A stretch of 59,390 nucleotides of DNA from Guillardia theta CCMP2712 (Eukaryota; Protista; Cryptophyta), in contig NW_005434496.1 of the NCBI RefSeq assembly GCF_000315625.1, positions 35,679-95,068 of the forward strand. The letters are read 5' to 3'. The translations under genes were made by a program, and so were the position numbers. Positions 11,868 to 50,190 of this stretch are shown here, in pieces (position 1 is the stretch's first letter; each line of letters begins with the position of its first letter). A model generated the notes under the pieces. The model was not told where the DNA came from. It saw only the letters and a list, made by a program, of their open reading frames with translations, and searched no databases.

Positions 11868-11967
11868 NNNNNNNNNNNNNNNNNNNNNNNNNNNNNNNNN
11901 NNNNNNNNNNNNNNNNNNNNNNNNNNNNNNNNNNNNNNNNNNNNNNNNNNNNNNNNNNNNNNNNNNN
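11868..11967. other. Assembly gap (100 N, probably of unknown size)
   Basis: Run of N. Confidence 1.
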
Positions 11968-14120: not shown

Positions 14121-14370
14121 CCCTACCCCCCACTCTCCTACTCTCCTACGCTCCTCTCCTAGCTCTGTCCTACCCTCTTTCCTCTTACCTCGAATCTTTC
14201 GCCTTTCACCTCTCGTATCTCGAGTCTCCTCATCTGAATCCATAAGGGATCTTCAACTCAGTGTCACAAATCAGAATATCTCAGTGGGGAAGGGCAGTAT
14301 CAGGAAGGCAACGAGTTCTGGAGGACGACAGCAGGAGGGGAACCAATAGGCTCAAGTCACAGGAAGGCGA

Positions 14371-14445
14371 GGTGAGAGCAGGAGAACAGAAGTGAGAGCA
14401 GGAGCACAGAAGGTGAGAGCAGGAGCACAGAAGGTGAGAGCAGGA
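14371..14445 (+). repeat. ~21-bp tandem repeat (gtgagagcaggagcacagaag) just upstream of the fucosyltransferase ATG
   Basis: About 3.5 copies. Confidence 0.85.
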
Positions 14446-14469
14446 GAGGGGTGTTCTTCACACCCTACC

Positions 14470-17400: not shown

Positions 17401-17913
17401 CTAACTCAAGTCCACGACGTCTTTGTTGGTACCGCACACTCCACCTACACATACTGCATTCACAGCAGAAGCCTTTCGGTCCCTGTATACGTTGGGCTGT
17501 CGGCAGGAAGCTGCTCGGTAGGAAGCGGACATCAGGCCGGACTTTTCTCTCGCGGATCTACCCCAGCTGAGGAGCAAGTCCCGCTGCATTCCCAGCTGGG
17601 GGACATGGAGGTTGACAAGTATCGCAACTGCACCATGGGCTACTACATCGCGATGCACGGCTGCATGGAAGAGATCGCTACCTGTGTGACGGCAGAGCAA
17701 GTCAGGACGTGGGCTGCTCCCCTCCTGATTGGGCTTAACCATGTCGAGCTGTACGAGCAGCTCTGTGCTCGGGTGGGATGGCGGGGGCTGCGATTCGTGC
17801 CTTCAACTGGCATCGTCTGCAGCGAGATCCTCGATAGTCATCTAGAGAGGCTATGGGGAGAGGAGGGGAAGGCTGACGAGCACACTGCCGAAGGAGGGAA
17901 GGGAGGCGTCTGA
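14470..17913 (+). CDS. Intronless 1147-aa protein with two tandem GDP-fucose fucosyltransferase-like (GT23/GT37/NodZ-type GT-B) domains and an N-terminal signal/anchor
   Basis: Each half carries GGxGNQ (GGFGNQIF / GGIGNQLL), motif I (GLHLRLG / AVHMRMG) and motif III (DVALVSLSEMFLGTALSSFS / DFFLLTQVHDVFVGTAHSTYT). Each is preceded by a CxxC...DCGC segment. Hydrophobic N-terminus TFFIIFFCLL. Confidence 0.8.
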   Translation: MGTVAKTTFFIIFFCLLDSFLAKGEEEPGDLFARYVKRLCSICSNRREDCGCDETLHGSAGGFRLLHEYALKYEGWAEEVRKGRAQELRFVVADVTGGGFGNQIFQAIQGLLVALELQMPLVVMGVHTREQTARLGMTWHPNLEQHYVFNAVLPLIDENVLEELRWREGRLTKMVYTHDAEGIEFLTCRNWHEEAAGYQFLRIHGITDVHMAELNVYHGRSIKEAFRGKTFFWLSHFLWDRDRWVQEVVQVETSPPAPWDGLRTVQELGTLLPASPQALRVGLHLRLGGHFLHFDHRHAFKEGSDVLDGLDPLQFYCGGHANSVKTVGPCLRTIIARHGEGHERIVVLWSSDNGRISERFIEEVVRIPHVSVVRILHKEEERYDHPEIRYAMADVALVSLSEMFLGTALSSFSFYMHASSLIVPYYMGHVPGSGCKRAASSEAGLVTHSVGSMHVWSSCFEDEDEEGGRERGAACEIADKELEETMRGCTAVFEIFRHNCLQRAVTCVSDADIKNWSSSLNLETDMGNFYNLRWSRDGLRWHYLVPDLIDCHSYREAKKLAASELEDNDRNDSVQEQSEVRSRQDVVAEESDSLDRRFKAFAQAVCQKCKAKQEDCGCEELLSSDPFFTLHKYASKYEEWSRRQDDREYMNTLRWVVVDVNGGIGNQLLQAVLALMIAIRTDRVLVVNLMTPVEYNLSHVLPLLPLEVPASLGWPRVSTREIATDHRDGRDGVQFWTCGDWRELDGVKFLHMMGLSDVHLPLLHPVHGWWFSKTFRGKPFFFLSYLLWTGEEMMEYPVVVKTFPRSQLSGPASMQALVAKLRHLTERESVGILAVHMRMGGYMKKKSQAYSPEAGKGDDFLLFSHKSILTQDWDGEGLSPLERYCLGDEASLQPALACLGRLVEQMRSSQGKEKVLLLWATERADMLEKIAPSFSQVHNVTILKVSPDSQALEETCSSSDVMRRRCHSLVGLTDFFLLTQVHDVFVGTAHSTYTYCIHSRSLSVPVYVGLSAGSCSVGSGHQAGLFSRGSTPAEEQVPLHSQLGDMEVDKYRNCTMGYYIAMHGCMEEIATCVTAEQVRTWAAPLLIGLNHVELYEQLCARVGWRGLRFVPSTGIVCSEILDSHLERLWGEEGKADEHTAEGGKGGV

Positions 17914-18058: not shown

Positions 18059-20802
18059 TTAGCTGTCCCCCTTGCCATTCTCAGGAGACGAGTTGTCCTG
18101 GAACTGAATGTTCGGCCAGGGGTCGGTGGCCGAGGCGTCTCCGGTGAAGCGCATGATCCGGTCCGGCACATACCGAGGACAGTCGTCTCTCTCGATCGCC
18201 TGACAGCGCCTAAGAGATCCGCAAGAGTTCAAATCCTACACGCCTACCTGCACGCCTCCACTGGGCCCCTCATCGCTTTCAGAGAAGGCCAGGGGCATGT
18301 GGAAGCCAAGGTCGCAGAAGATTTTCCTGGAGGCTCAGAAGATCAGGAAGAGAAGCGTGAGCTGCAGCAGAGAGACCTTCTCCAAGACATTGGGATGAAA
18401 GACTCGATCTCCAAACACGTGCTAGCTCTGCTCCCTAGCTCACGACAACAGCGTTGAGGGCAGCAAGCGCTCACCGATGCTTCATGGCGAAGCCCTCCTT
18501 GTCAGCCGAGAGCTTGTCGTAGGTGATGGTGAGCTGAGCGATGAGGATGTTGAGCATCCCGATGGTGACGCAGCTGGAGAGTTTCTGTCACATCCGATCT
18601 ACTAGCAGGGGGCGAGAGAAAGAGATGGTGAACTTACGTTACAAACACAAGCAGGAGGAAGCGAGTAAGAGAAGAGATGTCTGAGTAGAGAGGCTGTGCT
18701 ACACCAAGTACCTGCCATACAGCTGTCAGCCTGCCCCTCAACTTCATCGCAACATGTGCCAAATTATCATCACGCATGAATCCATCGCATGTCAACATCG
18801 CTACATGTCTTTTACCTCTTGAAAGAGCAGCACGACTGTCTTGTCCCATCCCTGGTCGAAGGGAACGTCGCCTAGAATGGTCAAAGCGGAACCGAAGCCT
18901 GCGACTCTCTCAGGGTCGAGGCGATGACGTCAGCAGCAGAATGACCGGCGATGAGGATGAGAATCATGAAGAGAGAATGATAGAGATCTCCGAACATGAT
19001 GCCGATGGTGTAGGTGAAGGCTGCCATAGGAGTCGACAAGATGCTGATCTGCAAAAGGCAACGTCACCAACAGACAAGAAGAAGATACAACTGGGAGAGA
19101 ACCACAAGCTTCTCCACTGCCTCACCTGAAACATCTGAGCCCATAGCAGGACGGCAACGATCGCCTTCGAGGGTCGTCCGGATGTCGAGGAGGAGGCAGA
19201 TGTTGCGGCCCCTGACGTGTCTGACTTGGCCTTGGAAGCAAGCAAGGTCCATGGGATTCCTCCGTTGAAATCTGTTACAGTGCGGTCAGATGTTACGGTG
19301 TACAACATCTGGCTAATATGGGACCGTTGAAGGCTCGGTTGCCGGTGGTTGAGTTGGTGCAATCAACACAAGTGGTGTCTCCGCATGACTGCGATGAAAT
19401 GTTGAGTAGGAAGACAAGACAAGCTAGGACAGTCGGAATTACATGAGTCGCATATCCGTACAAGATTAGCGCAAACGACGTCATTCTAAGAAGATTCCAA
19501 ATGCTTACAAGCCCCCTGCAGCCCCACGAGCTCAATCGCTGCATACACACATGCCGTCAAGTCACCTTGGAAGGCTAATACTGAAAGTTCCCAAATTAAT
19601 CGGGACGAGAATGCTCCGTTGGAGCTGCAAGAAAACGACTCCAAGCTGAATGCAAAGAGAACAATATGGGTCAGTTGAAGAGAGTTGCCAGGTCAGACCA
19701 ACAAGACACGGAAGTAAACAACAAAGAGGTGGGATACATTCCCAAGATGTACAACCTGAAGGGCCAAAGATGCCGCGGCTGTGATCAACAGTAGGATACG
19801 AATAGGCTAGCAACAACACGAGAGTCAGAAGACTGATATCGCTTCTGTTTGCTTTGAACCTCCAGGTCAGGTTCGCATCCCGACGGATCTTGAACATATC
19901 CCAGCATGAAGAAGAGCAGCAAGACCAAGTATCCCAACTCCTTGATGCAGAACGTCTTCAACCCAAATTTCTTCCACTTAAGCTCGAGCACTTTCCGAAC
20001 AGCAGGGTGCTTGAAAGACTCGTTGTCATCTACGAAATGTCTTGATCACAACCATGAGCAAAAACAGAAGGCAGTCATACCGAGATTGACTAGCCATCCC
20101 AGAGGCGAATTCCAAGGGTCTTCCACAAGGTCTGGGTCTCCATAGAGTTCGCGAATGTAATAGTTGACTCTGATCTGCAACCATGTAAACTCAATTGACT
20201 AGCGTTGATCGCCATGCCCGATATCGCTATTATGGTTTTGGGTCATCGTCGTGATTACACTGCTCTCCATCATCATCATCAGCATCATCATCACCATCAC
20301 CATCACCATCACCATCATCACCATCACCATCACCATCTTTTTTTGGAATCTCATCGTAATCGTAATCGTAATCGTAAATGAGCATACTTTTCGTCCAGGA
20401 AGTTTCTCCTTGGAATGCCAAAGAAGGCCATCGAGAAGGACCGGCATCAGGTCAATACATTCTTTTCCAAGAGTCCCTATGATGTCGCGATGGTATTGAA
20501 ACAATTCCTTTGACAACTCCGTGAATGATCCAACAACGCAAGACATATCTTCGTCTACCTCTCGTCCGTACCAGTAACCATGAATGTCTGCCCGAATGGT
20601 CAGCAGGTCACTGCAAAGAATACGTCAATGTTTCGAGGCGACATCTGCTTGTGAGTTTACCTCAAGATGAATTCAACGATAGCGAACTTCCCATCATGCA
20701 GTGCCCAGTAGAGGGGGCTGATGCTTGCTCCATTGATGTCAACCTAATACAAGTTGTAATGCACTGATGCACATCCCAAGTAGACATTATCATCATCATC
20801 AT

Positions 20803-20833
<31 letters not shown>

Positions 20834-23800
20834 TCCATCTCCTCTTTGTCCTTCTCATCACAATCACGAGGCATACATCTCGGCAATCAACGAAATCTTA
20901 ATAACTTCCTCCACAACGACCATCAAATCATTCTTCCATAATCACAACTGTCAACATCAAATCATTCTTCCATAATCACAACTGTCAACATCAAATCATT
21001 CTTCCATAATCACAACTGTCAGCATCAAACAATCCTCTAACCTGACACAACCATTTCGCCCGAGCGTTTCGGGGCGCACATCCTATCGATAACTGAAGCG
21101 ATTCGACATTCCCCTCAACCAGCGCGTGCGTGATGCCATTGCCTCCCATGTTCAACCCGCGGGACATGCTGTTTGCTGCTCGCTTCCACATCTGCAGAGA
21201 ATGAGAACCAGACAACGAGCATCGTCCCTTGCCCTCCCTCTGCCTCTGCCTCTGCCTCTGCCTCTGCCTCTGACTCTCCTTCTATCTCTACCGCTGACTC
21301 CCCTACCCAACGAGTGCTCTACCTCTTTCCAGAGCGCTTCTGATTTGGGACACCAGGATTCGCCGAGCACCTGCGATTCGATGAGGAAAAATCGAAAAAC
21401 AAGAAGGCAAATCAGAATATCAGGGGAGAGAAAGATGATTGAAAAGAAAATTTTCAGACGGAGCAGAGGACGAGCTCGATTTGAAGAAGGGCGTGATGAT
21501 TCAGAGAATGATTGAGGAGAAGATACAAGACGTAGGATAGTAGCGGGTACCTCTTCCAGAGTGAGGATCATGGCTTGACCGAAGGGACTGATATATTCTG
21601 ATCTCACGCCGTAGCGGATGTGTCGGATAGTAAGGTGGAAGAGTTGTTCGAAGAACTCCTGCAGAAAACGCACATGCCAATGAGAAACGGAGTGAGAGAC
21701 AGGAAGGTAATCAACATATCAAGATGACATGGCTGGTAAACAAGCAAAGAAGAAACGAGAAGCACAGCTTGCAGATTTTCCAATCGGAGAGTTACAACCT
21801 CGGGGTCTGTGACGCTCAAAAGTAGCATGTTCATGATGTGATGAATCAGAAGTCCCCACCTACAGGAAGACAACAAACGCAGGAAGAAGGTCACAACACT
21901 TCAAAAACTAGATTGCAATCAACGAACATCTTGATAGATCTTCTGAAGAGATGGGTTTGCTCCGGGGACTGTAGCGAACCCATCAGACCGCAATTCAGAT
22001 ATTTTCACAAAGTAAATAGTCAAGAAGTGAAAGTAAGTGGCCAAGTGTTGTCAGATGGATTTAAGATGATTGGGAAACACAATGCAACAGATTTGATCAT
22101 ACCACATCGTTCAGATGCTTCCAAAACACAGTTCCAAGTCGCTGTCAAAAGTACTTCGGTCAGGAGGCTGGTACATGGCAAACGATCACAAGTTTTCAGA
22201 CCTCTTCATCGCAGCATCCTTTCAGGTTCTCCCAATCTTTTATGACAAGGTCGTTGCGCCCATTGTTTAGAGCCTCAAGCTCAGTGGTCAAGGACTGTTG
22301 CATGCAGATGTCATGTGTGGGAGATGATTGATGTGTCAACAAGTGTAGCAAGTTGAGAGTTCGACCTCTGATACCAACCTCCACAGCCATCGGAAAGAAT
22401 CGCTCATATGATCGCCCCACCTGCTCCTTCATCACATCGCCAAACACTACAAGGCATAGTTCTACTCTTCAGCTAGGGCGATCCTCACTGCATTCTCGAA
22501 TGCTTTCCCGATGTTCTTGATATGATCAGGTCTCATGCCGCTGACATCAACATTGGTCAGAACTGTCGACCTTGCAATCATCATGAGCACCTTTCGTGGA
22601 ACTTGGGAGCAAAGACGTACACGTTCTCGATCTGCTTCTCAGGCTCCCAAATCATCTCGATTACATTCATGACGAAATCATAGATATCATCTACAATGAC
22701 TTTGTGCTGTTCATTGTCAACATTTCTCACTCCCGACAACACCTCACTCTCTTACATCAGGGCGGAGATTCTTCGGATCATTCGGCACGCTCGAGCCTCG
22801 CAACCCCGCCACACTCCCCCTTCCTGCGACGGAACAGAGTCAGAGCCGTGCCTTCACATGCTAACGGTCAACGTGTTGAGGTGTTGGAATTTGAGTTCTC
22901 CGAGCTTGTGCTCTTGTTGAGCAGGTATGAGACCTGCCTTGCAGGCTTACTGGGATCCTTCCGATACACTCACTCACCCCTTGCTCTGACTGGTTTGGCA
23001 CCAAACTTGACCGCCGGATGCGATCGGCGCTGCTGGCGTTGGACTGATGACTCTGCAGGCGATCCATCGCATCCTTATTCTCCTCCGATGATTCTCGTCG
23101 CTTCTCGAACATGGAAGGACACAGAGTCAGCAGCTCTGCCTCCAGGTTGTTCTTGAACGTCTCAGAGTCGATGTGCTCTTTTAGGTAACTCCCCGTGTGC
23201 TCTAGGGACGAGGCGTAATCTTCTCCATCCTGTATGGCCTCTGACATGTTCTCACAGACCATGCGGAAGACAACTCCCCAAGACTTCTCAACTTCGTGTG
23301 TCCACTCCTCTCCGGATACCTCAGCGAGCACGTTCATGAAGACAGGGCCGATGAGAGGGATGTGATGGGGTCGAACGTTGTAGTTCACGTGCCGCAGCCC
23401 CAGCCACGTCACCTGCTGCTTCATGTTCTCTGGGTCGTCAGCGAAGGAAACCAGCATGCCAAGGGTGTCGCCCATCTTGACTGCCATGTACTCTCTCGGC
23501 TTTGTGAAGAGGCTTGCCACGTTGGGAGCAAGGCGGAAGAGACAGTCGTACACCATCTCGCCGAGTTCAGCTGGGATATAGTGTTCGAGGATGGACTCCC
23601 ACGAGTCTCTAACGATTCCCAAGGTGGATCCTACCTCTACGAGAGACTGATCGAGGGCTTTGGACAGGTATTCCCATATCCAGATCCACGCTTTCAGCTC
23701 CTCCGTCTTCAGCTCGTCCCCGAGGCTGAGGCGGAATACGTTGAGGACGATCTCTTGCATCTGAGGCATGTGCGATGCCTTCACTCCCTTGCGGTGATGC

Positions 23801-25350
23801 ATCGGAGCTAGATCCGCTATCTTGAGATATATCTCGTTCGGAGAGTCGATGTTGTCCACGATGCTCGACAACATGTCGACGAACTTCGTTCCCTGCACGG
23901 CACGGTTGGTAAACCTGAAGAGCGGCTCGAGCACCTCATTGTCTCGAACGGATTCGTAGATTGCGTTTCCAAGGTCGGAGTATGTGACTTTCTTCAAGAG
24001 AGCTTTCCACGAAGACACAATGAACTGGGAGTGATGCTTCCACTCATCGAGATTCACTGAGAGTGACTTGCTGAAACGATGGTTGGTCTTTTTCTTCCTC
24101 TGGTGATGCCCTCGGAAAACTCCTCCTGCTGATCGCAGGTTGGTACCTTGTATAGACCTCCGAGATCCGATTCTGTAGCTGCCGTCAATCCCAGTATTGA
24201 CCGTCGAAGTCTTGCGGGAGGATGAGACGACCGAAATGTCCCCCTTCGACCGGATCGATCGGGGAGACTCTAACGCGAGACCGGGATTCGCGTAGAGTTG
24301 AGCGTAAGAACCTGAAGCAAAGGAGCCAAAGCCCTTGCTGCCCAACCTCGATGATCCTTGAGCTCTGGCTCGAGAAGGCTTCTCGCTGACTTCTGCATCC
24401 CTTGTCGCAAGGTTGGAAACATCCTTGTCACTCCCTTGGATCGCCGTCAAGGCCAGGAAAGGACAACTTCCTGAGTCCAACTTGTCTGCCTTTGGGGCAG
24501 GGTGTCCCAAAGGCAGAGTCGGTAATTTAGATCTTGCATGCCCATTACTTTCCTTGAGGCAAGGCACTTCCTCTGTAAGTGTGAGATCGGTTTGCGAGCC
24601 ATTGGAGTTGCCTTGTTCAGCCTTGGCGCCTTCTCGCTCTGCTTCTTCTTCGAGCTCAGGCTCTTCTTGCAAGACATCCAGGTGCCCCTGCATCCCATGG
24701 TTGACGTACGGAGAGTCAGGCTGCAGGTCAGCGCTGGGAAAGGCACAATCATCCCATCTTGGGTCGTTGTGTTTCCTCACAGGAAGTTCGTCAAGGGAGT
24801 TCTTGTCAGAGAGCTTCTGATCGAGAAGAGAAGCATGCATTCCAAACTGAATGCTCTCGATGGATATCCCCGAAGACATGGTGATGGCTGCCTCGGAACC
24901 CACGGGTCTACTCTGCTCAGCCGCTGGTCTTGGCGACAAGGTGAGTTTGAACGAACTATTCTCGATGCTACCAGCGTTGTCATTGGTCTGGACCAAGTCA
25001 CCAAAGAAGTGCTGGGCGAGGATGAAATGAGCCTTCTTGGAATGCAGCTTGAAGAATTGCTCGGATGCATCCTTCCCTGAGAACCGCTTGATGACATACT
25101 CCCCTCCCGGGTGCTGCGAGAGATACGGGAATAAATCGAAGATCATCGAATCGACTATCAAGGGAATGAAGGTCTGAGACTTCATGCTCTGAACTTCAGA
25201 TAGGGTGTACTTTGGAAACCCCATTTCTTTCTTGCGCCGATTCATGGCACAGAGCACGTCCTCTTTGAAGCAAGAGTCCTCTTCCTTGACCATGATCAGA
25301 TAGGGGATTTGAAATCTATCTGCAACAAAATCAGTACGTTTTGAAAGCAT
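18059..25350 (-). CDS. Cytochrome b5 / multi-globin / TRPV-like channel fusion, paralogue A; multi-exon
   Basis: Cyt b5 (FDLFPYLSQHPGG...GKDASEQFFKLHS). Globins with LAPMHHRKGV, LGLRHVNYNV, degenerate APKFHE.GMR and LTIRHIRYGV. Ankyrin-like ISPLYWALHDGKFAIVEFIL. Pre-S1 FKHPAVRKVLELKWKKFG, pore VLLFQE|VLGVAQP, S6 IGMLNILIAQLTITYDKL and TRP-helix-like FAMKHRASTCLEIES. Stop TAA at 18059-18061. Confidence 0.85.
20923..21030. repeat. ~34-bp intronic tandem repeat (tcaaatcattcttccataatcacaactgtcaaca), about 3 copies
   Basis: Visible direct repeats in an intron of paralogue A. Confidence 0.9.
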
Positions 25351-26425: not shown

Positions 26426-26697
26426 GAGAGAAGAAGTGAAATGCTGAGAGAAGAAGTGAAATGCTGAGAGAAGAAGTGAAATGCTGAGAGAAGAAGTGAA
26501 ATGCTCACGAGAAGAAGTGAAATGCTGAGAGAAGAAGTGAAATGCTGAGAGAAGAAGTGAAATGCTGAGAGAAGAAGTGAAATGCTCACGAGAAGAAGTG
26601 AAATGCTCACGAGAAGAAGTGAAATGCTCACGAGAAGAAGTGAAATGCTGAGAGAAGAAGTGAAATGCTCACGAGAAGAAGTGAAATGCTCACGAGA
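26426..26697 (+). repeat. Minisatellite of mixed 20/21-bp units (gagagaagaagtgaaatgct / cacgagaagaagtgaaatgct)
   Basis: About 13 contiguous copies of two variants with no unique spacers. Confidence 0.95.
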
Positions 26698-26737
26698 ATG
26701 AAGTTGTGAATTTCAAGCAGGAACGACCAATCCAGGA

Positions 26738-32717: not shown

Positions 32718-33758
32718 ATGCGCGGATATCACCGGGATGCTACAACTTCGCCTCTTTCCAGAAAGCAGACAGGATCTTACGAGGTCATCCCGGAGTCAGT
32801 GCAGTACCTCTACCGCCTGTACTCCAAGGAGGTGGTGCACTTGACCAAGGAGCTGTGCCTCAAAGAGGAAAAGCTTACCTCCATCCCACTGGTAATGAGA
32901 AACTTCAAGCATCTCCACAAGTTGGATCTGAGCTACAACTTGCTCACCTCTCTTCCTGTAAGAGCATGCTTCACCTCCTATGCTGCTCTACCTGTCTACT
33001 GCGTTCGTCTCACCTTGTTGTGCTCAGGTCAAGATTCTTGATGAGTACTTCCCCCATCTCACCTCCCTCGATGTCTCCTACAACCGCCTTGGCTCGATCG
33101 AAGACATACAGCAGCTCGGAAAGCTCCCCCTCCTCCAGGAGCTGAACGTGCTCGGCAACCCTCTGCTCGCTGTCAACCAGCGCCCTCTGCTCCTGAGCCT
33201 CTTGATCTTCAATCAGAGTCGTCCGACCCGAGAGCAGCTGGAGGGGATGCTCGGGTACTCTGACGCCGCTGGGAGGGGTACCACCAAACAGGATTCCAGC
33301 GGTAGCATCCTGGCCTCAGAGTCGATCTCGAAGATGTTGGTTGCTGGACTTCAGCCCGGGAACGTGCTCCCGCGCGTGGCGGTTGCTCGGCTCTCGCGAG
33401 CTGGGCTGCGAGCTACTTCCAGGTTCGCCGTATACTGCGACCTGTCGGCTGCTCCAGTCCCTCGCAACTCTCCCTTCCCGTTCCTGGTCGTGCTGAATGA
33501 GCTGGAGATCACCAAGGAAGACTTGGATGCGGCAGCAAGGATGGCGCCGAGGCGGAGTCCCCTCCAGGCGAAGAAGGCCAAGGCCAAGCGGCTGATGGGG
33601 AAGAGGAGGATGGAGGAGCTCGAGCGGTTCACGGATGCGGTGCAGAATGCGTACCGTGAGCGAAAGATTGAGCACACGCTGAAGAAACTCCTGGAGGAAG
33701 GCGTCATCGATGATGGGTCTTCTTTTGAGGAGGAGGGAAAGGAGGAGGAGGAGGGAGA

Positions 33759-33789
<31 letters not shown>

Positions 33790-35665
33790 GATCTTATAGA
33801 GAATGGAAATATGGGAGATGAAGAGGATGTTCTGTCGGAAGTTGCGCAAAGGACTTACAAGTTGAGGTCAGTGTCGTCCATGCTGGAAAACAGGCTGAAC
33901 AGAATGGAAGACAACAGCTCAGATGGAGTAAGTGACAACTCTTTCCAGTTATCCATGTCCAGACCCAAGACAGGCACGAGGCAGAGGCAAACAACATGTC
34001 CAGCATCCTGGTGGGACCAGGAATGGATGCTCAACGATGGGGGCCTTCAAGAGATTGACCTCCCGACGAGGCTGTCTGTGGTGGACCAAGGGGCAGAGGA
34101 GCTCGAGAGGACGAAGAGAGCGGTGGAGAAGCTGACGGAAATCGGGCATGCAGAGACCTCTCCTTCAAGGAGCTCGACGGAGAACGTGGCGATCGAGTCG
34201 AAGTACCAATCTTTGAGAGAGGAGGTGGACGATCTCAGGAAGAAAGAGACTGCGTCCAATCTGAAGATGCTCTCCTCCTCCACGCCCTCCTCCTCCTCAG
34301 CTGCCAGGGCGAAGCAGCTGAACAAGTTCAAAAGTCGCTTCGAGTTCTCAGATATGCTTAGGTGGGAGCTCAGCATTCAAAAGGATAGGGACAGCACGTT
34401 CCTCACCCGCGACCTCCCTGGATCTGTGAAGCGCCTCAATGTCGACGAGTGGATGCAGCAAGGAGTAGACGAGGCAGTGCAGGCGGAGGAGATCGACCGA
34501 CTGTTTACAGCGACCAACATACAGAACAAGGTCGACACGCACCAGGTCAACAAGATGAACCGCGAGACTGTCTTCTTTCAGCGGAAAATGGCGTTCCAGA
34601 GCCAACAGCAGAACTTCGTCGAGAAATGGCACAATCACCGTAATCGTCTCAGCCTCATCAGAGCTGGTAAGTACCCCACAGACACGCCGGCGCGCCGCTC
34701 GACTTCCAGCAGGTCCTGGAGGGATGCTGGTGGGAATCAGAAGGGAGATGACAGGGAGGAGAGGAGAAGAGAGGAGAGAGGAGAGGAGGAGAGAGGAGTC
34801 GTGCAGGAAAGTAGCAAGGCGAACGTATCTGGTAAGGCAAATTTCCATGTGGTCCTGTCAAGAGCGCTTGACAAGCTGGAACGAACTCTGATGAGTCCTA
34901 CTGAGGAGACTGCCGACGTCAGCCAGGGGTCAAAGGCGGCGGGTTCGGGGTCAGATGTACAGCCAGCGTCCAAGGGGACAAGAACACAAAAACATCGCAA
35001 GGCCGAAGATTACACCAAGATGTTCGATCTTGGCATCAATCGGATCCTGCAGACGAAGGTGCTTCTGGTCACTGCAGCTCAATATTTCCGATTGACGCTC
35101 AGTCAGGATACACGACAGCAAGACGATAGGGCCGCCGCCATGCTGATCCCTCGAGCAAACCTCCGGGAGGTAAGCGGGAAGAGATTGAGGAGGAGGAGAA
35201 GAGGAAGAGGTTGGAGAGAGGGAAGTAGGGAAGGGAAAATAGGCGGGGAAGGGATGGAGAAGGAGCAAGAAGAAGAGATAGAGGAAAGATGCGGGAAGAG
35301 ACAACAAAGAAATTATCACAAGGAAGATTTTTGGAGGGGAGGGGGGAAGGGGGGAGGGAGGGGAGGCGGAAACGAAGGGAAGAGACGGGAAGGAGAAACA
35401 GAAGAGGGGCGGAGGATAAGTACCCTGTGGATGTAATCAAAACTGGCAGGTCCGTCGTGAGCTGAAAGAGTACCACGATAACTTCGTCTCACAGCGTCTG
35501 CGGTTCTTTGAGGTGAATCGTGCTGAGGGGAGGGCAGGGAGGAGGTTGCTCTGACCCACGAGCAGGAGAGAACGGACATGGAAGCGATGGTAGATAAGAT
35601 TATCGTCGCCAACAGGTCCCGACACCCTCCTCCTGTTCACCATCTTGCGATGACATCGCCTCAGG
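32718..35665 (+). CDS. Leucine-rich repeat (SDS22-like) protein with acidic and coiled-coil C-terminal region; boundaries uncertain
   Basis: LHKLDLSYNLLTSLP|...LTSLDVSYNRLGSIEDIQQLGKLPLLQELNVLGNPL, followed by a long ORF. Confidence 0.75.
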
Positions 35666-35856: not shown

Positions 35857-36471
35857 TCACATCTTCCAACCCGATGTCACACAGCACATCATCGCGACAC
35901 CCATCACCGCCGCCATCACCCACTCCCACCCTCCTGGCACTCTCCTCGATGCTGCTGACGTTCCTCCGGTGCTCCCTGTGCTCGTGCCGGTACTGCTGCT
36001 CGTCCCCGTCCCTTGCACGCTGTAGCTGCATGCTGCCGTCGCCATGATCCCGTTCCTCCCCGTCGCCCACGCCGCCTGCACCGTGACGCTTCCCGAGCTG
36101 GGCGCGACGACCTCTGGCGACGTCGAGCTGATCGTGCGGGAGTTGCTGCAGGCTCCTCCCTGGACGCCCCAGCTCCCGCTCCCCGAGCTCGACGTCGCCT
36201 GCACGACGTACTGTGCGTCTTGAGGAGGAGCGAAGCCGGAGACGGCGAGCTTCTCTCCGGGCTGGAGGGTGGAGCCGCAGCTGAGCTGCTGGCCGGCTCT
36301 GGATAGGTAGATGGACTGCTGGGAGGACTGCTGGATGGCGCCTCCCATGGCGGGGTAGTTAGTGCCAGGGGCGATGGACTTACTGCAGCCAGAGCCGATC
36401 ATATTGGAGGAGTAAGCAGAGACGAGGGGGAGGGAGAGGAGGAGGAGGGGGAGGGAGGATAGGGAGTACAT
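35857..36471 (-). CDS. Secreted or GPI-type surface protein with Reeler-like beta domain and S/T/G stalk (copy 1)
   Basis: Signal peptide LPLLLLSLPLVSA, Cys-containing domain ending VVAPSSGSVTVQAAWATG, ST-rich stalk and hydrophobic tail. The Reeler assignment is by resemblance only. Confidence 0.7.
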   Translation of the reverse strand: MYSLSSLPLLLLSLPLVSAYSSNMIGSGCSKSIAPGTNYPAMGGAIQQSSQQSIYLSRAGQQLSCGSTLQPGEKLAVSGFAPPQDAQYVVQATSSSGSGSWGVQGGACSNSRTISSTSPEVVAPSSGSVTVQAAWATGRNGIMATAACSYSVQGTGTSSSTGTSTGSTGGTSAASRRVPGGWEWVMAAVMGVAMMCCVTSGWKM

Positions 36472-42239: not shown

Positions 42240-42530
42240 TCCGCACCGGGCCTTTGGGAACTCGGAACTGAACTCGGAACTTCGGGTTCAAAGAAGGGCG
42301 GGCGTGTCACTGGCACTGATTTTTTTTTTTGCCCGCGGCCGGGCCGGCCGGGCCGCCGGAACCTCTCGAGCAGCAGTGGCACTCAGGTGAGTCTGAGTCC
42401 AATCTGTCATTCAGCCTTTACTCAAAGTTAACTGGCATTGCTCTGGCAACGATCCGACATTACTCAGCTCGTTTGAAGCACAGTGCGGCATGCGATCAGC
42501 CCCGGGGGGATTCATCCGGGGCCGAATGAT
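42240..42530. other. GC-rich island upstream of the beta-helix gene
   Basis: gcccgcggccgggccggccgggccgccgg, tgagtctgagtc and gaactcg repeats. Confidence 0.45.
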
Positions 42531-42582
42531 GGCGTTATAAGGACCGTGTCAGGTTATTGACAGTAATGCTACAACAGAAGTT

Positions 42583-44843
42583 TCACTCATCGGCTTGCTG
42601 CTGGGGGCTCGTGTTGCTCTTTTCCAGCTGTGAGATGTTGGGCCATGGATCTTTCGGGGAGGCATCACCCGTGAAGCGCATGACACGGTCGGGAACGTAG
42701 CGAGGACAGTCGTCCCTCTCCAGCACCTTGCGAGGACCTGTCAGACTTGCTACTCCTTCTCTCTATCAGGAAGACCTGGATGCCTCCGTCCGGGCCGTCG
42801 TCGCTCTCGGAGAAGGGCAGAGCTTCGAAGAAGTTGTGGTCGTTGAAGAAGCGTCTGTGGGAAGATGCAGGTCAAGGGAACGAGGTGGAGGCTGAACTTC
42901 AGTACCGCCGCCAAGACATGGGAAGGAAAGACTCGATCTCGATGCATATGGTTGCTCTGCATGGAGGATAAGCCGAGATTGAAGGAGGAGGAAATGAGTT
43001 GGGGTCAGGGATGGAGGAGGAGAGCAGAAACATAGTTGAGTGAGAGAGGGAGGACGAAGAGGAAGTGGAGGGAGAGGAGGAAGGGATGGAGGGGAAGGAG
43101 GAGTAGGAGGAGTTTGAACAACCTGTACTTCATGGCGAAGCCCTCCTTGTCAGCCGTGAGCTTGTCGTAGGTGATGGTGAGCTGAGCGATGAGGATGTTG
43201 AGCATCCCGATGGTGACGCAGCTGCAGTGGAGGTGAGAAGAGGCGAGCAGGTGGAGGAGAGGCTGACAGGACGAAGACGAGGAGCATGAAGCGAGAAAGT
43301 GCAGAGATGTCTGAGTAGAGAGGCTGCGCAACTCCGAGAACCTGTTCATTGGGATGAGGAGAGTGAAAGTGCTGCGGCTTAATCGACCTCTTGGAGGAGG
43401 AGGACGATAGTTTGATCCCATCCTTGATCGAAAGGAGAATCGCCCAGGATGGTCAAGGCAGAGCCGAACGCTGGGAAAAGTCAGGAGGGAGGGAGGGAGG
43501 GAGGGAGAGGGTAAGGGATGTTGGAGGATCAAAAACTAGGGGAGGAGGGAGGAGGGAGGAGGGAGGAGGGAGGAGGGAGGAGGGAGGAGGGAGGATGGAC
43601 AGTACCAGCCATCAGGATGAGAATCATAAAGAGAGAGTGACTGAGGTCGTTGAACATGATGCCGATGGTAAAGGTGAAGGCTGCCATAGGAGTCGACAAT
43701 ATGCTGATCTGAGAAGGCAAGGCCAGTCAGATCGCAATGCTGAAGATGGTGGAGGAGCCGCGGGCTGAGACAAGTAGGAGAGAAAGGAAGGAGAGAATGA
43801 AGTAGGGGAGGGTCGGGGTCGAAGTCAAATTGAGGGATTGTGGGGAGCAGGGAGAGTGGGGGTGGGAGATCGAGGAGGAGAGGGAGGAAGAAGAGAGGTG
43901 AAAGAAATGAGGACGAGCTTCAAAAATGGGTGGAGGGATTGCGGCATGCCCGTGGGCGGTTGGGAAGGAGTATCGGTGACCTGGAACATCTGGACCCAAA
44001 TGAGCACAGCGAGGATGGAGCGAACTGTGCGTTGGCTGGCAGGAGCGTAGATTGCGGTCGTTGTTGTTGTTCCTCCGTCCGACTTGGCCTTGGCGGCGAG
44101 CAGGGCCCGAGCACCGTAGGAGACGTCTGCTCAAACTCTTTGAGAGGAGGAGGTGGGTAACGAGGAGGGAGGAAGATGAAGTGAGGAGGAGAGGAGGAGA
44201 TGGAGGAATGAAGAGATTGAAGATGAAAATAATGGAGACGATGAGGGTGTTGATGATCATTTGATATCGTCAATGGAAATGGAGATTTGAGAGATGACGA
44301 TGATGCAGATTATGATGACTATGCAGATCATGATGATTATGCAGATCATGATGATTATGCAGATGCTGCTGCAGCTGCAGCTGCTGCTGCAAATGATGAT
44401 GATGATGATGATGATTTAGACCTTGATAATCAAATGATCGGGTTCCATTGTTGAGGTAGCAGTCTGTGCTGTTTGTAAGCAAGCTGCAGTCGAAAGAGCA
44501 ATCCTGGCGGTAAAAGATCACGAAAGGAGCAAAAGGAGGAGCAAGTAGCTACGTGGCTTGCGGCGTTGACAAGTATGAGAGCACATGAAGTCATACGGAG
44601 GATGTTCCATAGCCCAGTAAGACTCCTGCAGAGGTCCAGGTGACTTGACAGCTAACTTTGACGTTTGACAGCCTCACCTCGGCAGCTCCACAGTGAAAGG
44701 ACCAAAACCAACGACCTTTGTGATCCGTTTGCGGATCTGACGGAAGACAACGTAGAGCTGATGGGAAAAATTAGTATGAAAAATCATATTCGATGGTGTT
44801 GTTGTCGTCGTGGTATTCACGATCATCATCATCATCATCATCA

Positions 44844-44876
<33 letters not shown>

Positions 44877-44894
44877 TCGTCATCGTCATCATCG

Positions 44895-44932
<38 letters not shown>

Positions 44933-47900
44933 GTTGTTGTTGTTGTCAATAATATTCTTCACCAAGATTACATCTGCAACTGACCTGTACAAGCAAGCTC
45001 ATAATCGCCACTGCTGTGAGGAAGCTTCGAACATTCTGAGATGTCATCAGGAAACGATCTAACTGCATGCATTGCTTACATTATGGCTAGAATCGCAACC
45101 AGTCGGATCCTCAACATGTCCGAACATAAAGGCAATCAACATCACAAGGTACGCCGTCTCTTTCAAGCAGAAGATCTTGAGCCCGAAGCTCAACCACTTC
45201 AGCTCGAGTGTCTTCTTGACAACTGGATGCTTGAACGACTGGTTGTCATCTGTCATACCGTCAAGTCAAACTCTGCAGTGCGCTCGACTCACCAAGGTTG
45301 ATGTAACTTGCTAACGGGGAGTCCCAAGGATCTCTATAAGAGTCTGGATCGCCGTAGAGTTCGCGGATGTAGTAGTTGACCCTCACCTTGGATACAATCA
45401 TCAGCAGCCACCCCAGCTAGCTTCCCACCACAACTCAGTTTCTCACCTTCCTCCCTGGCAGCTTCTCCTTCGAATGCCACATCAATCCATCCAGCAGCAC
45501 CGGCATCAGGTCCAGACATTCCTTGCCGAGAATTTGTACGATGTCGTGGTGGTGTCTGAACAAGTTCTGCGAGGAGAACATGAGCACATATCGAATCGCA
45601 TCTGCGTCTGTAACCTCTCTCCCGTAGTAATAACCGTGAATGTCAGCGCGGATTGTCAGGAGATCACTGTGAATTGAGAGTTCAGTCTTACACTTGTCGC
45701 ATCAAAACATCGCAACCTCAAAATGAACTCAACGATGGCAAACTTCCCATCATGCAACGCCCAGTACAAGGGAGAAATCGAAGCTCCATTGATGTCAACC
45801 TGGACAGAACGAAAATGTCTACATTAAAGCTTTGATTGCATACCCAACTTGTTTACCTGACACAGCCAATCTGCTCTTACATTCCTGGGTGCACAACTGA
45901 TCGCTGCTTGCAACGCAAGAGCGTTTCCCTCCACCAGGGCATGAGTGATGCCGTTTCCTCCCATGTTCAGCCCCCTTGTCATGCTGTTTGCTGCTCTTTT
46001 CCACACCTGACAGCCTCTGAGTTGCAGAGCAGAGGGAGTGTTTCCGACTCATCACCTCCTTCCACAACTCTTCAATCTTTGCCGTCCAAGAATCCTGAAG
46101 GATCTGCACGAGAAGAAGACACATCATAAGGGCTGAATTTGACATGATCGAAGTAGCAAACCTCCTCGAGAGTTAGAATCATCGCATGGCCGAAGGGGCT
46201 GAGATATTCTGATCGAACCCCGTATCGGATGTGTCTGATTGTCAGCTCAAACAGCTGGTCGAAGAATTCCTATTGCGCGATCACACAAGTTGAATTGAAG
46301 GTTGAGATGTTTGCCTCCGGCTCTCGAATACTGATGAGGAGGGTTTCAACGATGTGCTTGAGCAGTTTTCCCCACCTTTTACACTGACATCAGTTCACAT
46401 GTATACACGTGGTAGACTGTACATCGTCAAGGATCTTCGAAAGATGTGCGTTTGTTCAGGAGACTGTATCAAACAGTTTAGCAAATTCTTGCGTCACCAA
46501 TAACACGATTGAACAACGATAAAATAATTTCATTACCACGTCATTCAAATGTTTCCAAAATATTCTTCCCATTTCCTGTCCCAGTGTGTGAGGAACTCAT
46601 AAACATCAACCCTCTGATGCTTCGCACTTACCTCTAATTCACATTTTTCTTGCACAAGTTCCCAATTTGCTACGATCATAATGGCACGATTGTCATCGAT
46701 TGCATCGAGCTCTTTGATCAGCACCTGACAAAACAAACATTAACTTCACTCATCGAGGTGCTAACTATCATTGTCACATCTGCAATCATCCTCCACATCC
46801 AACGAAAGGAATCACTCATATGCTCCGCCCACCTTCCACAAAGTCAGAACAATCGAACGATTCGTGAAGTCTCACTCGTCGCCGAGGGAGTGTTTCATGG
46901 CTGACTCAAATGCTTTCCCAATCGACTTGACATTTGCGCTTCTCATACCCCTGCGACCATGGTTATCCTCGCTTGAGACGACGATGACTATGATGACGAT
47001 GACGGAGAGAGAGAGAGTGAGAGAGAAAGAGTTGATAGAGATGAAAATTGATTTCGATAACGTCAGTGATGGTGGTAGAGGTGAAGGCGCAAACAATGAT
47101 AGAGCAAAACACTTACTGCTCATAAAACTTAGGCGCATAGATGTAGATGTTTTCCACTTGCTTCTCAGGTTCCCAGACCATGCTCGAGGTGTTGAGGACG
47201 AATTCAAATATCAACGAGACCAACGCGTCCTGAGACAGAAAAGCAGGAGGGAATACATTCGGAAAGATCGATGGAGAAAGAATGGGAGGTGAAGAGAGGA
47301 GAGGCGAAGTGAAACAAGTGGACAAATGACACAAGGAGTGAGAAAGAAGACGAGATGTCAAGATCGACTCCAAAATTTCAACCAGCGACTTCACCTCTGC
47401 TCCAACATGAAGTTCACCTTCCACCGTCTTACGGAAAGCCTGGGCCTTCTTCATTGTAATTATACTTCCCTTTCCTGTAAACCTCTCATCATGCACAATC
47501 ATGATATTGTTTCATAATGAGATCTCACGCTGCAAAGCAGCTCCCACGTTCTCATTCTTAGAGGATTTGTTGGCCGATTGTGCGCTGACATGTAGCAGAT
47601 GCGAGAAAACCTAAGAAGACGGAGTGAGCAGCAGCGCTGGACTTGTCTACAGTCTTACTCCTTGCTCGTTGGTGGTGATCGAGTTCCTGTGCCCCCCCGA
47701 ACTTAATGCGCTCTGGGTCCTGACAGCTGATCCGCTGTCACTCATCATGGTGTCCGACTTGGGTCGATATTGGATAGTGCCGTTGTTCTCGAACAGGGAC
47801 GGGCAGGAGGTGCTGAGCTCCGTTGCGAGGGTGCGCTTGAGAAGCTGGATGTCGCCGTGCTCTTCTATGAACTCCGTGGTGTGTTCCAGCGAGGAAGCAA

Positions 47901-50190
47901 AGTCTTCTCCATCCTGTATGGCCTCTGACATGTTATCGCAAACCATCTTGAACACGATTCCCCAGGCTTTCTCCACGTCCTCTGTCCACTCCTCTCCGGA
48001 TACATCAGCGAGCACGTTCATGAAGACAGGACCGATGAGAGGGATGTGATGGGGTCGAACGTTGTATTGTACATGTCGGATTCCCAGCCAGCTCACCTGC
48101 TGCTTCATGTTCTCTGGGTCGTCAGCGAAGGAAACCAGCATACCAAGGGTGTCGCCCATCTTGACTGCCATGTACTCTCTCGGCTTTGTGAAGAGGCTTG
48201 CCACGTTGGGGGCTAGCCGGAAGAGGTGATCATAAACCATCTCTCCCAGCTCTCCTGGAGTGTACTTCTCCAGCACAGCCTCCCAAGAGTCTCTAACGAC
48301 ACTCAAGGTCGATCCTACCTGCTTGAGAGTCTGATCCAAAGAAGTTCCCAGGTAAGTCCACATCCAGATCCAGGCCTTCGTCTCCTCTGGTAGCATGTCG
48401 TCTCCGAGAGATGTCCGGAAGACTGCAAGCACGATTTCCTGCATCAACGGCATCTGCGATCCCTTCACTCCTTTGCGGTGATGCAAAGGAGCAAGATCAG
48501 CTATCTTGACGTAGATGTCGACCGGGTTTTCAATGTTTTCAACGATGCTCGACAACATATCTACAAACTTTGTTCCTTGTACTGTCGGGTTGGTAAAGCG
48601 GAAGAGGGGTTCGAGGTACTCGTTGTCCTTCACAGATTCATAGATGGCCGTTCCAAGATCTGCGTATGAGACTGCCTTCAACAATTTGTTCCACGATGAA
48701 ATGATGAATCTTGAATAATATTTCCATTCCGACATGTCGACTGGAGGGGCGTTGCTGCGGCGGATCGGAGCATGTTTCCTCCTATTTCTCGTTCGATAGA
48801 CTCCGCCATTAAGCTTCAAGTTTGTACCTTGCAGCGCCTGAGACCTCTGAGCAAAGCTCTCTCCCGCTGTGAAGACGGTAGACGCATGTCGCGAGGAGAT
48901 GGATACGTCTTCCCTCGATCTCATCGACCTTGGCGACTCGTACGCCACCCCGTTAGGGACGTAGAAGTTCTTGTAGGAGGTAACACCTCCCGCACCTGAC
49001 TTCTCACTCTTGAATGAATGAAACGACCCGGTGAGTTTTCGGTTCGATCCCCTCTTAGCATGCAGAGGCTCTTCATGCCTGGAATGTTTGAACGAGTTTG
49101 ACAACCCAATCTCACTATCTTCACGACCGTGTTCACTGCCAGCCGACCGGCTTCTCGTGAAGTTATCCGATGGTTCTTCTGCATTCTCAGGAAATTTGGG
49201 CTGAAGTGAGCCAATCTTGTCCAACGGCAGCTTAGTGAGGGCCAAGAAAGGGCAGCCAGCGCAGTTGTCACCGTTCTTGCTGATGTCCGGATGGCCTGGG
49301 ACAGGAGGATGATTCTTGGGCATTCCATGCTCGCTGCCCATGGCCCCGAATGGAGACCTCTTAGGACTACCTGAGTCAGACGACCTCCTCGGTTGAGAGG
49401 CTTGATCAGTAGGTTTGTATCCAAGCGAACGTTTCGGGGAAGCAGGTTTATCGGAGATGCCTTCCTGCTGAGCCTTGGGCATCGGTAACTTCTCAATCAT
49501 CTGTTTTCCGTCTTGCTGACCGCCAGCTTCCAGGCTCTTCGTCTTTCCTTCATCTTCCTTCCCAACTTCATCTTCCTCCTGCTCCTCCTTCAGGATGTCC
49601 AAAGGAACGAAGGGATGTGCGTGCATGTGGAAGGCTTTTGCGGCAACTTCTGTATCGCCGACTATAAGGTTAGCTTTGATCTCATGGGGATCAATGGAGT
49701 ATTGAACATCTAGTGTCGGCTTTGATAAATCCGCCTGGTGCTCGTAGTACTCGCCAAACCTCGGGGAGTGTAAGTCCCCTGCAGGACCCGGCGCTTGAAG
49801 GTCAGGCTCGTTGACCCTATGGACTGACTGCTCTGCTTCCTTTCCTGTATGCTGTCCATCGCCATTCTGATTGGCTGAATCTGCAACATCTCCAATGTAG
49901 AATCTAGCGAGCTCTTGATGGGCATGCTTGCTGTGTATCCTCAAAAATTTCTCGGATGAATCTCTCCCATAGTTGTTCTTGAGGATGAAAGCACCGCCCG
50001 GGTGTTTGTTGATATATGTCGACACGTCAAAGACCATCTCTTGGATGATAATGAGAGCATCTCCTGCTCTAACCCTCTTCTCAACCTCTGACTTGTGGAT
50101 TGTGGGGTTTCCTAGTGCGTGCTTCTTCTTCTCAACATCTCTGGTGAACTTCTGGTCGAGCTGCTGCTTTGAGTCTTCACTCTTAGACAT
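42583..50190 (-). CDS. Cytochrome b5 / multi-globin / TRPV-like channel fusion, paralogue B; multi-exon
   Basis: Cyt b5 (FDVSTYINKHPGG...GRDSSEKFLRIHS). Globins LAPLHHRKGV, LGIRHVQYNV, degenerate APKFYE.GMR and LTIRHIRYGV. ISPLYWALHDGK, DLLTIRADIHGYYYGRE, FKHPVVKKTLELKWLSFG, pore LLQE|VLGVAQP, S6 IGMLNILIAQLTITYDKL and FAMKYRATICIEIES. Stop TGA at 42583-42585. Confidence 0.85.

What the first reader, a model, noticed from the sequence alone, without database searches (positions are those of the whole stretch)
42583..50190. Second complete copy of the same heme-sensor channel 17 kb away (paralogue B)
Seen: identical domain order and many shared intron positions. Domains are conserved while linkers and introns have diverged beyond alignment by eye. 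Independent retention of the whole architecture is strong internal evidence that the fusion is real and under purifying selection, not a chance adjacency or misassembly. Inference: A and B may co-assemble as heterotetramers or be tuned to different ligand ranges. I recall the motifs ISPLYWA and DLLTIRAD..YYYG from uncharacterised dinoflagellate globin-rich predicted proteins; this is unverified but would imply a wider algal family.
Basis: partly seen in the sequence, partly recalled or inferred. Interest (0 to 1): 0.9.

Follow-up and report, generated by a model that had tools for sequence, protein, structure and literature searches.

The report
Globin-fused TRP channel, second paralogue
This alga carries a second intact, expressed gene that joins haem-binding globins directly to a TRP-type ion channel, one of eight such genes in its genome; the protein looks like a channel with a built-in oxygen, nitric oxide or redox sensor, which I found described nowhere and nobody has tested.

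Summary
Confirmed. The window is from the cryptophyte Guillardia theta. Gene B (50190-42583, minus strand) has 30 exons and 1686 codons without a stop. It encodes cytochrome b5, four globin folds (the third lacks the haem histidine), two ankyrin-like repeats and a TRPV-like channel. Spliced contigs from three studies join globin 2 to the membrane domain. All 29 intron positions match paralogue A, and dN/dS is 0.13-0.17. A and B are not fully independent, because globin 2 and the S6 gate exon appear homogenised by gene conversion. Their haem-pocket residues are identical, so different ligand tuning is unsupported. The family exceeds 100 clusters, including dinoflagellates and Klebsormidium; the channel-proximal histidine is invariant (111/111), and b5 sits at either end. 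A 2014 paper listed B's globin 2 as a 110-residue stand-alone globin and never mentions a channel. Most likely a haem gas/redox-gated cation channel (about 0.6); gating is untested.

The parts
42583..50190 (-). Gene B, 30 exons, 1686 aa. Exons (high-low): 50190-47659, 47610-47529, 47474-47395, 47229-47117, 46950-46876, 46832-46778, 46724-46632, 46575-46537, 46463-46423, 46375-46315, 46269-46162, 46103-46056, 46006-45857, 45799-45717, 45666-45615, 45566-45447, 45386-45293, 45249-45080, 45035-44985, 44757-44678, 44625-44553, 44503-44422, 44126-43981, 43708-43606, 43470-43388, 43341-43268, 43221-43123, 42956-42906, 42854-42776, 42726-42583
49888..50106 (-). Cytochrome b5 domain (aa 29-101) with both axial histidines, H63 (HPGG) and H86
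   Evidence: Pfam PF00173 E 4.5e-16
48745..49875 (-). Low-complexity N-terminal linker with three islands kept in all eight paralogues: a Cys-Pro-Phe motif (C313, haem-regulatory-motif-like), SPRS, and GTN..GGV followed by a basic stretch
48316..48714 (-). Globin 1 (aa 493-625): Tyr B10 (Y517), Phe CD1, Gln E7 (Q538), His F8 (H570)
47911..48312 (-). Globin 2 (aa 627-760): Tyr B10, Met E7, His F8 (H706). Identical to the published 'single-domain globin' EKX33440.1. Holds a probable gene-conversion tract with A (48213-48094: 118 of 120 nt identical)
46701..47910 (-). Globin 3: split pseudo-globin. Helices A-C (aa 761-801), a disordered insert of about 97 aa, then helices E-H (aa 899-987); Phe933 stands in place of His F8
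   Evidence: hhalign to globin 4, probability 98.8, E 7e-17; model of paralogue P0013
45965..46694 (-). Globin 4 (aa 990-1123), channel-proximal: Trp B10, Phe CD1, Trp E7, His F8 (H1070), which is invariant in 111 of 111 family members
45179..45964 (-). Two ankyrin-like helix pairs (with ISPLYWA at 45778), the DLLTIRAD..YYYG segment, the linker beta-sheet and the pre-S1 helix
43167..45178 (-). Six-TM TRPV-like channel domain, S1-S6; filter V-L-G-V-A-Q (no GYG), gate N1571-I-L-I-A
   Evidence: PDB profile search TRPV3 E 8e-23; Foldseek TRPV3/TRPV1/TRPV6
43123..43221 (-). Exon 27 (S6 gate and S6-TRP linker): zero synonymous differences among A, B and the unlinked C189 paralogue; probable gene-conversion tract
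42637..43166 (-). TRP-helix equivalent (Ala1592 at the TRP-box Trp position, Arg1596 kept) and conserved C-terminal segment with a beta-strand
42350..42582 (-). Transcribed 3' untranslated region (contigs reach 42406; raw RNA reads pile up here)
18059..25293 (-). Paralogue A, 30 exons, 1597 aa, same architecture and the same 29 intron positions; sister of B in the tree

Best explanation
B is one of eight G. theta paralogues encoding a subunit of a tetrameric TRPV-like cation channel whose usual ankyrin stack is largely replaced by a chain of globins. Shown: the spliced gene, the domain order, the haem-ligand residues, purifying selection and a TRPV-like predicted fold. Inferred: globins 1, 2 and 4 and the b5 domain bind haem b. 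Binding of O2 or NO, or a change of iron redox state, at globin 4 moves its H helix, which runs into the ankyrin pair, the linker and the pre-S1/TRP-helix module that gates TRPV channels. That opens or closes a probably non-selective, Ca2+-permeable pore. The b5 domain keeps the globin irons ferrous or relays redox state, and the haem-less globin 3 is a structural spacer. A and B arose by an old local duplication (before the Guillardia/Hanusia split) and are maintained by selection, while short conversion tracts keep globin 2 and the S6 gate alike.
For: Spliced contigs link globin to channel. A full-length cDNA contig exists for a paralogue, and an intronless 1256-aa single ORF for a relative. 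dN/dS is 0.13-0.17. His F8 of globin 4 is kept in 111 of 111 members spanning about 20% mean identity, and globin 4 directly precedes the ankyrin part in nearly all complete members. The AlphaFold model of paralogue P0013 aa 540-1582 has pLDDT 87 and pTM 0.83, i.e. a confidently packed globin-ankyrin-channel unit. The closest solved structures are TRPV3, TRPV1 and TRPV6, and 9 of 12 TRP fingerprint residues match. b5 is fused N-terminally in cryptophytes and C-terminally in a clade holding Symbiodinium and Klebsormidium members, which suggests a repeated need for a reductant. Hanusia orthologues of both A and B exist.
Against: There are no biochemical or electrophysiological data. Globin 4 has Trp at both B10 and E7 in G. 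theta, which could block gas binding. The filter lacks the acidic residue of TRPV1 and varies across the family. The conserved Gly563/Trp697 gating pair of TRPs is replaced (Ala/Ala), so gating may differ from TRPV. Most family members lack b5. I could not inspect model coordinates, so contacts between globin 4 and the gate are inferred from helix order only.
Confidence: 0.6

Rival explanations
1. Tethered enzyme or buffer: the b5-globin chain is a membrane-anchored NO dioxygenase, nitrite reductase or O2 buffer working like a flavohaemoglobin, and the channel is gated by something else (voltage, lipid, temperature, Ca2+).
For: Globin 1 has the Tyr B10/Gln E7 pair typical of bacterial single-domain and flavohaemoglobin-type globins (own knowledge). 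The nearest solved globins are 'haemoglobin-like flavoproteins'. A fused b5 would supply electrons for turnover. G. theta has no other Pfam globin match.
Against: Most members lack b5 and globin 1. The invariant globin is the one next to the ankyrin/gate module, and its position is fixed. A scavenger would not need 8 paralogues that vary mainly in S1-S4.
Confidence: 0.2
2. Redox or haem-availability sensor, not a gas sensor: the b5, globin 1, globin 2, globin 4 chain reports cytosolic redox poise or free haem (aided by the Cys-Pro-Phe motif), and the iron oxidation or coordination state of globin 4 gates the pore.
For: The Trp B10/Trp E7 pocket of globin 4 and the Met E7 of globin 2 may exclude or displace gases. 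The CPF motif is in all eight paralogues. b5 was recruited at either end.
Against: The CPF motif and Trp/Trp pocket are lineage-specific, and dinoflagellate members have neither. An electron-transfer chain would be interrupted by the haem-less globin 3.
Confidence: 0.13
3. Non-conducting or vestigial membrane domain: a multi-globin protein with a TRP-derived anchor that no longer passes ions.
For: Two TRP fingerprint residues are lost and the filter is divergent.
Against: S5-pore-S6 is among the most conserved parts (88% identity A vs B, dN 0.08). The NxLIA gate is kept across the family, and a full TRP linker/C-terminal fold is predicted.
Confidence: 0.05
4. B is a redundant recent copy, an assembly duplicate or a decaying pseudogene.
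For: Short stretches nearly identical to A.
Against: Synonymous sites are near saturation elsewhere (dS about 2.1), introns are unrelated, the frame is intact, B-specific spliced contigs exist, and Hanusia has its own orthologue.
Confidence: 0.02

Closest known systems
TRPV channels (TRPV3, TRPV1, TRPV6, Drosophila Inactive), group I TRPs
   Same: Ankyrin-linker-pre-S1-six-TM-TRP helix-C-terminal strand layout. Best sequence and fold matches (E 8e-23; Foldseek 4e-10). 9 of 12 fingerprint residues of PMC9242649.
   Different: Only about two ankyrin-like repeats, with four globin folds and a b5 in front. Gly563 and Trp697 equivalents are Ala. The filter is VLGVAQ with no acidic residue. About 15% identity.
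G. theta chimeric globins EKX33177.1 and EKX39126.1 and 'single-domain' globins (Smith, Vinogradov, Hoogewijs 2014, PMC4101818)
   Same: These are paralogues of B (C189, C78c). EKX33440.1 is B's globin 2, and four other 'single-domain' entries plus one EST match globins of other paralogues.
   Different: The paper counted three globins per chimera, treated the fragments as free globins, and never uses the words channel or transmembrane. It missed the pseudo-globin, the ankyrin/TRP half and paralogue A.
Bacterial globin-coupled sensors (HemAT, DosC, AfGcHK; own knowledge)
   Same: A haem globin placed N-terminal to an output domain that it is thought to control.
   Different: The known outputs are soluble enzymes or chemoreceptor domains. 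Here the output is an ion pore, the globins are 3/3 globins whose nearest solved relatives are haemoglobin-like flavoproteins, and there are several in tandem.
Haem-regulated animal channels (Slo1/BK, Kv1.4, KATP, EAG; own knowledge)
   Same: A haem or gas signal acts on an ion channel.
   Different: They bind haem at short motifs or PAS domains and contain no globin or b5 domain; different channel families.
Algal NOS-globin fusions (PMC8728061)
   Same: Algal multidomain proteins with a globin, in KnNOS2 next to an ankyrin motif.
   Different: The partner is NO synthase, not a channel.

Membership tests
Group I TRP channels | Six-TM domain with pre-S1 and TRP-helix fold | tested here: met
   Model of paralogue P0013 and Foldseek; profile search. 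B itself was not folded as a joined protein.
Group I TRP channels | 12-residue fingerprint (PMC9242649; members carry 7-12) | tested here: met
   B: W1294, F1302, Y1309, F1512, F1561, N1571, L1573, I1574 and A1575 match. L1536 is hydrophobic only (Phe in A). A1485 and A1592 do not match.
TRPV subfamily | Six ankyrin repeats | tested here: not met
   About two helix pairs only, and no Pfam Ank hit.
TRPV subfamily | TRP-box Trp697 and S4-S5 Gly563 | tested here: not met
   Ala at the Trp position in 94 of 102 members; Ser or Ala at the Gly position in 96 of 102.
TRPV subfamily | Phylogenetic placement inside TRPV | not tested
   The tree held family members only.
Group I TRP channels | Tetrameric cation conduction | not testable with these tools
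   Needs electrophysiology or cryo-EM.
K+ channels | TxGYG filter | tested here: not met
   No GYGD or TVGYG in any frame of the window.
3/3 haem globins | Myoglobin fold with Phe CD1 and His F8 (globins 1, 2, 4) | tested here: met
3/3 haem globins | His F8 in globin 3 | tested here: not met
   Phe933; His is kept only in a few deep-branching members.
3/3 haem globins | Haem and gas binding | not testable with these tools
   Needs spectroscopy.
Cytochrome b5 | Pfam fold with two axial His | tested here: met
   PF00173 59 bits; H63 and H86.
Globin-coupled sensors | Ligand state of the globin controls the output domain | not testable with these tools
   Inferred only from architecture and conservation.

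The most novel reading that the evidence does not exclude
A widespread algal and protist family of TRP-like channels is gated directly by O2 or NO through a built-in globin, with a fused cytochrome b5 as reductant. In G. theta, paralogues whose pore helices are kept identical by gene conversion co-assemble into mixed channels.
Probability: 0.45. Interest if true: 0.92.

Novelty: new variant of a known kind. Interest (0 to 1): 0.8.

Why it matters
No ion channel with its own globin sensor turned up in ten full-text searches of the open literature. If these channels are gas- or redox-gated, they give algae (cryptophytes, coral-symbiotic and free-living dinoflagellates, a streptophyte) a one-protein route from O2 or NO to membrane potential and Ca2+. 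That would offer a testable answer to what the globins of these protists do: all 16 Pfam globin matches in the G. theta genome lie inside these eight channel genes. It also corrects the published globin census of this alga and offers a possible genetically encoded O2/NO-to-current transducer. The paralogue pair adds a clean case of apparent exon-scale concerted evolution of a sensor domain and a gate.

Tried and rejected
Folding B exon 1 without an alignment failed (pLDDT 35). Pairwise BLASTP did not detect globin 3 as a globin; a profile comparison did. Ten literature searches found no paper on a globin-TRP fusion, but subscription journals are not covered. Codon bias as the cause of the identical exon 27 was considered: GC3 is 0.91-0.94 there. 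It was judged insufficient, with P about 3e-10 under 3'-end codon usage, and other paralogue pairs differ at 6-13 of about 25 synonymous sites in the same exon; an RNA-level constraint is not excluded. A spurious 87-nt intron in exon 1 of A from my spliced aligner was rejected because the frame is open. The last exons of the C189 paralogue could not be found (N gaps). The 'G4 E7' rows are offset by one residue and were not used. As the operators asked, the joined B and A proteins were never sent to a search or fold tool; they were used only in local scripts, and paralogue P0013 (61% identical) stood in for structure work. Ten other window ORFs gave no Pfam hit.
Full report
Organism. The window lies on contig C178 of an 87-Mb, 669-contig assembly. 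Two other contigs of that assembly have lengths (419,931 and 90,164) equal to those on record for Guillardia theta CCMP2712 proteins P0014 and P0003, and my gene model of locus L014 reproduces P0014. The organism is therefore the cryptophyte G. theta. The nearest foreign relative is a Hanusia phi protein, 95% identical over globins 1-2.

The observation. Gene B runs on the minus strand from ATG 50190 to TGA 42583. A 30-exon model gives 1686 aa with no stop, 28 GT-AG introns and one GC-AG intron. Contigs of three independent studies skip 15 listed introns exactly (12 more joints were not printed; the remaining exon borders rest on contig pieces, splice consensus and homology). One 2460-nt contig runs from the end of globin 2 to S4, and a 2026 RNA-Seq run gives 136 reads piled at the 3' end. 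The runs with contigs are only guessed to be RNA, but intron-free contigs make that likely. Paralogue A (25293-18059) has 30 exons, 1597 aa and the same 29 intron positions and phases. The introns do not align. Nei-Gojobori dN/dS over the folded parts is 0.17 (bootstrap 0.14-0.22), or 0.13 (0.11-0.16) without the near-identical tracts, where dS is about 2.1 and close to saturation.

Anatomy. Exon 1 holds a cytochrome b5 domain with both axial histidines, a low-complexity linker with three conserved islands, and globins 1 and 2. Globin 3 is a split pseudo-globin: helices A-C, a disordered insert of about 97 aa, then E-H with Phe in place of the proximal His (profile match to globin 4, probability 98.8). 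A few deep-branching members keep the His, so it appears to be a degenerated true globin. Globin 4 follows, then two ankyrin-like helix pairs, a linker sheet, pre-S1, six TM helices, a TRP-helix equivalent and a conserved tail. An AlphaFold model of paralogue P0013 (aa 540-1582, 102 sequences) has pLDDT 87 and pTM 0.83. Sequence and fold searches both give TRPV3, TRPV1 and TRPV6 first. B matches 9 of the 12 TRP fingerprint residues of PMC9242649 but replaces Gly563 and Trp697, an interacting pair, with Ala, as does almost the whole family. It therefore looks and probably works like a group I TRP channel, but fails two TRPV-defining features.

Not two copies but eight. The genome has eight loci (C178 x2, C78 x3, C189, C192, C29). 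All have b5, the globin chain and channel exons; C189 is interrupted by assembly gaps. All 16 Pfam globin matches of the genome fall inside them. Smith et al. 2014 (PMC4101818) described two of these as b5-globin chimeras and listed seven 'single-domain' globins. Their EKX33440.1 is residue for residue globin 2 of B, and four more entries plus one EST match globins of other paralogues. The paper never mentions a channel. One paralogue is on record as a full-length 4.9-kb intron-free contig.

A and B are sisters but not independent. They group together in the tree, and each has its own Hanusia orthologue (P0006 and P0001), so the duplication is old. Yet 118 of 120 nt are identical at 48213-48094 in globin 2, and four-fold sites there differ at 0.20 against 0.53-0.91 for all other paralogue pairs (permutation P 2e-4). 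At two diagnostic positions both G. theta copies read Ser and Thr where both Hanusia copies read Thr and Asn, the pattern expected from recurrent conversion within each species. Exon 27 (the S6 gate) has no synonymous difference among A, B and the unlinked C189 copy, and exon 24 (S5) differs at 1 of 30 between A and C189, while the flanking introns are unrelated. Codon bias does not account for this. Gene conversion is the best reading (inference); an RNA-level constraint remains possible. Identical pore helices would permit mixed tetramers but do not show them. The haem-pocket residues of A and B are the same, so divergent ligand tuning has no support; divergence sits in b5, S1-S4 and the linkers.

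The family. A profile of the globin 4-to-C-terminus core finds 472 clusters at E below 1e-30 among 1.84 billion representatives; nearly all of the best 150 have this architecture or are fragments of it. The commonest core is globin, pseudo-globin, globin, ankyrin, channel. His F8 of the channel-proximal globin is present in 111 of 111. b5 is N-terminal in cryptophytes and a few others but C-terminal in a separate clade. A metagenomic eukaryote encodes globins and channel in one uninterrupted 1256-aa ORF. The ESM Atlas holds two unnamed eukaryotic clusters of this shape.

How it most likely works. Four subunits form a TRPV-like cation pore. The haem of globin 4 sits where TRPV channels have their distal ankyrin repeats, and its last helix leads into the ankyrin-linker-TRP helix gating module. 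Gas binding or iron redox change there opens or shuts the pore, b5 keeps the irons reduced, and globin 3 is a spacer (0.6). Rivals: a tethered NO-scavenging enzyme with independent gating (0.2), a redox or haem sensor without gas binding (0.13, favoured by the Trp/Trp pocket of globin 4), a non-conducting anchor (0.05) and a redundant or decaying copy (0.02). Everything about ligands and gating is inference.

Novelty and verdict. Ten searches of the open literature found no description of a globin-TRP fusion; subscription reviews of protist globins could not be checked, and public records already carry the Pfam labels. The scan has noted the same family on paralogue A and others; I had reached the same reading before that look-up. 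A word search of earlier notes for gene conversion returned nothing. I class it as a new variant of a known kind (a TRP-like channel with a new sensor module, or a globin-coupled sensor with a new output), which would become a new category if gas gating is shown. Interest 0.8.

Noticed in passing
P0002 (MMETSP transcript): Mosaic: its front half matches paralogue C78b (260/268, 217/226 aa) and its membrane half matches C189 (112/130, 97/101). Either a chimeric assembly or a real recombinant.
   Followed up: partly
L010, L018 (G000:C189): N gaps cover the ankyrin exons and probably the last three exons, which explains why the public model EKX33177.1 stops at 1060 aa.
   Followed up: yes
L014 7600-7900: The public model P0014 (EKX39126.1) skips the S6 gate and TRP-helix exons, which are present in the DNA.
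   Followed up: yes
P0145, P0146, P0148, P0151, P0152, P0155, P0165, P0166, P0168, P0169: Clade with cytochrome b5 at the C-terminus, including Symbiodinium natans CAE7570961.1 and Klebsormidium nitens GAQ91211.1; in several members the globin 3 position keeps its His.
   Followed up: partly
P0029, P0030, P0033: Proteins with two globin-channel units in tandem: two-repeat channels or merged neighbouring genes.
   Followed up: no
P0092: A 2461-aa protein of 14 tandem His-bearing globins related to this family's globins, with no channel.
   Followed up: no
window 7627-8844 (+) and L017 14051-18231: A PTEN-like phosphatase/C2 gene lies about 9 kb from A, and one also neighbours the Klebsormidium member; probably coincidence.
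   Followed up: no
window 35959-36466 and 38714-38213: Inverted repeat of 522 bp at 92% identity between A and B, with no Pfam hit in its ORFs.
   Followed up: partly
window 14350-17910 (+), 32962-35433 (+): A 1187-aa open frame without Pfam hit converging on A's 3' end, and an 824-aa frame with a weak LRR match.
   Followed up: no
window 46314-46270: GC-AG intron in B where A has GT-AG; spliced in all three contig sets.
   Followed up: yes
L015/L016 6233-11771: Nearly intronless family member with an upstream b5 reading frame on eukaryotic metagenome contigs; sister to the Guillardia clade.
   Followed up: partly
window 9762-10117, 11868-11967, 26428-26704: Two N gaps and a short tandem repeat array upstream of A.
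   Followed up: no
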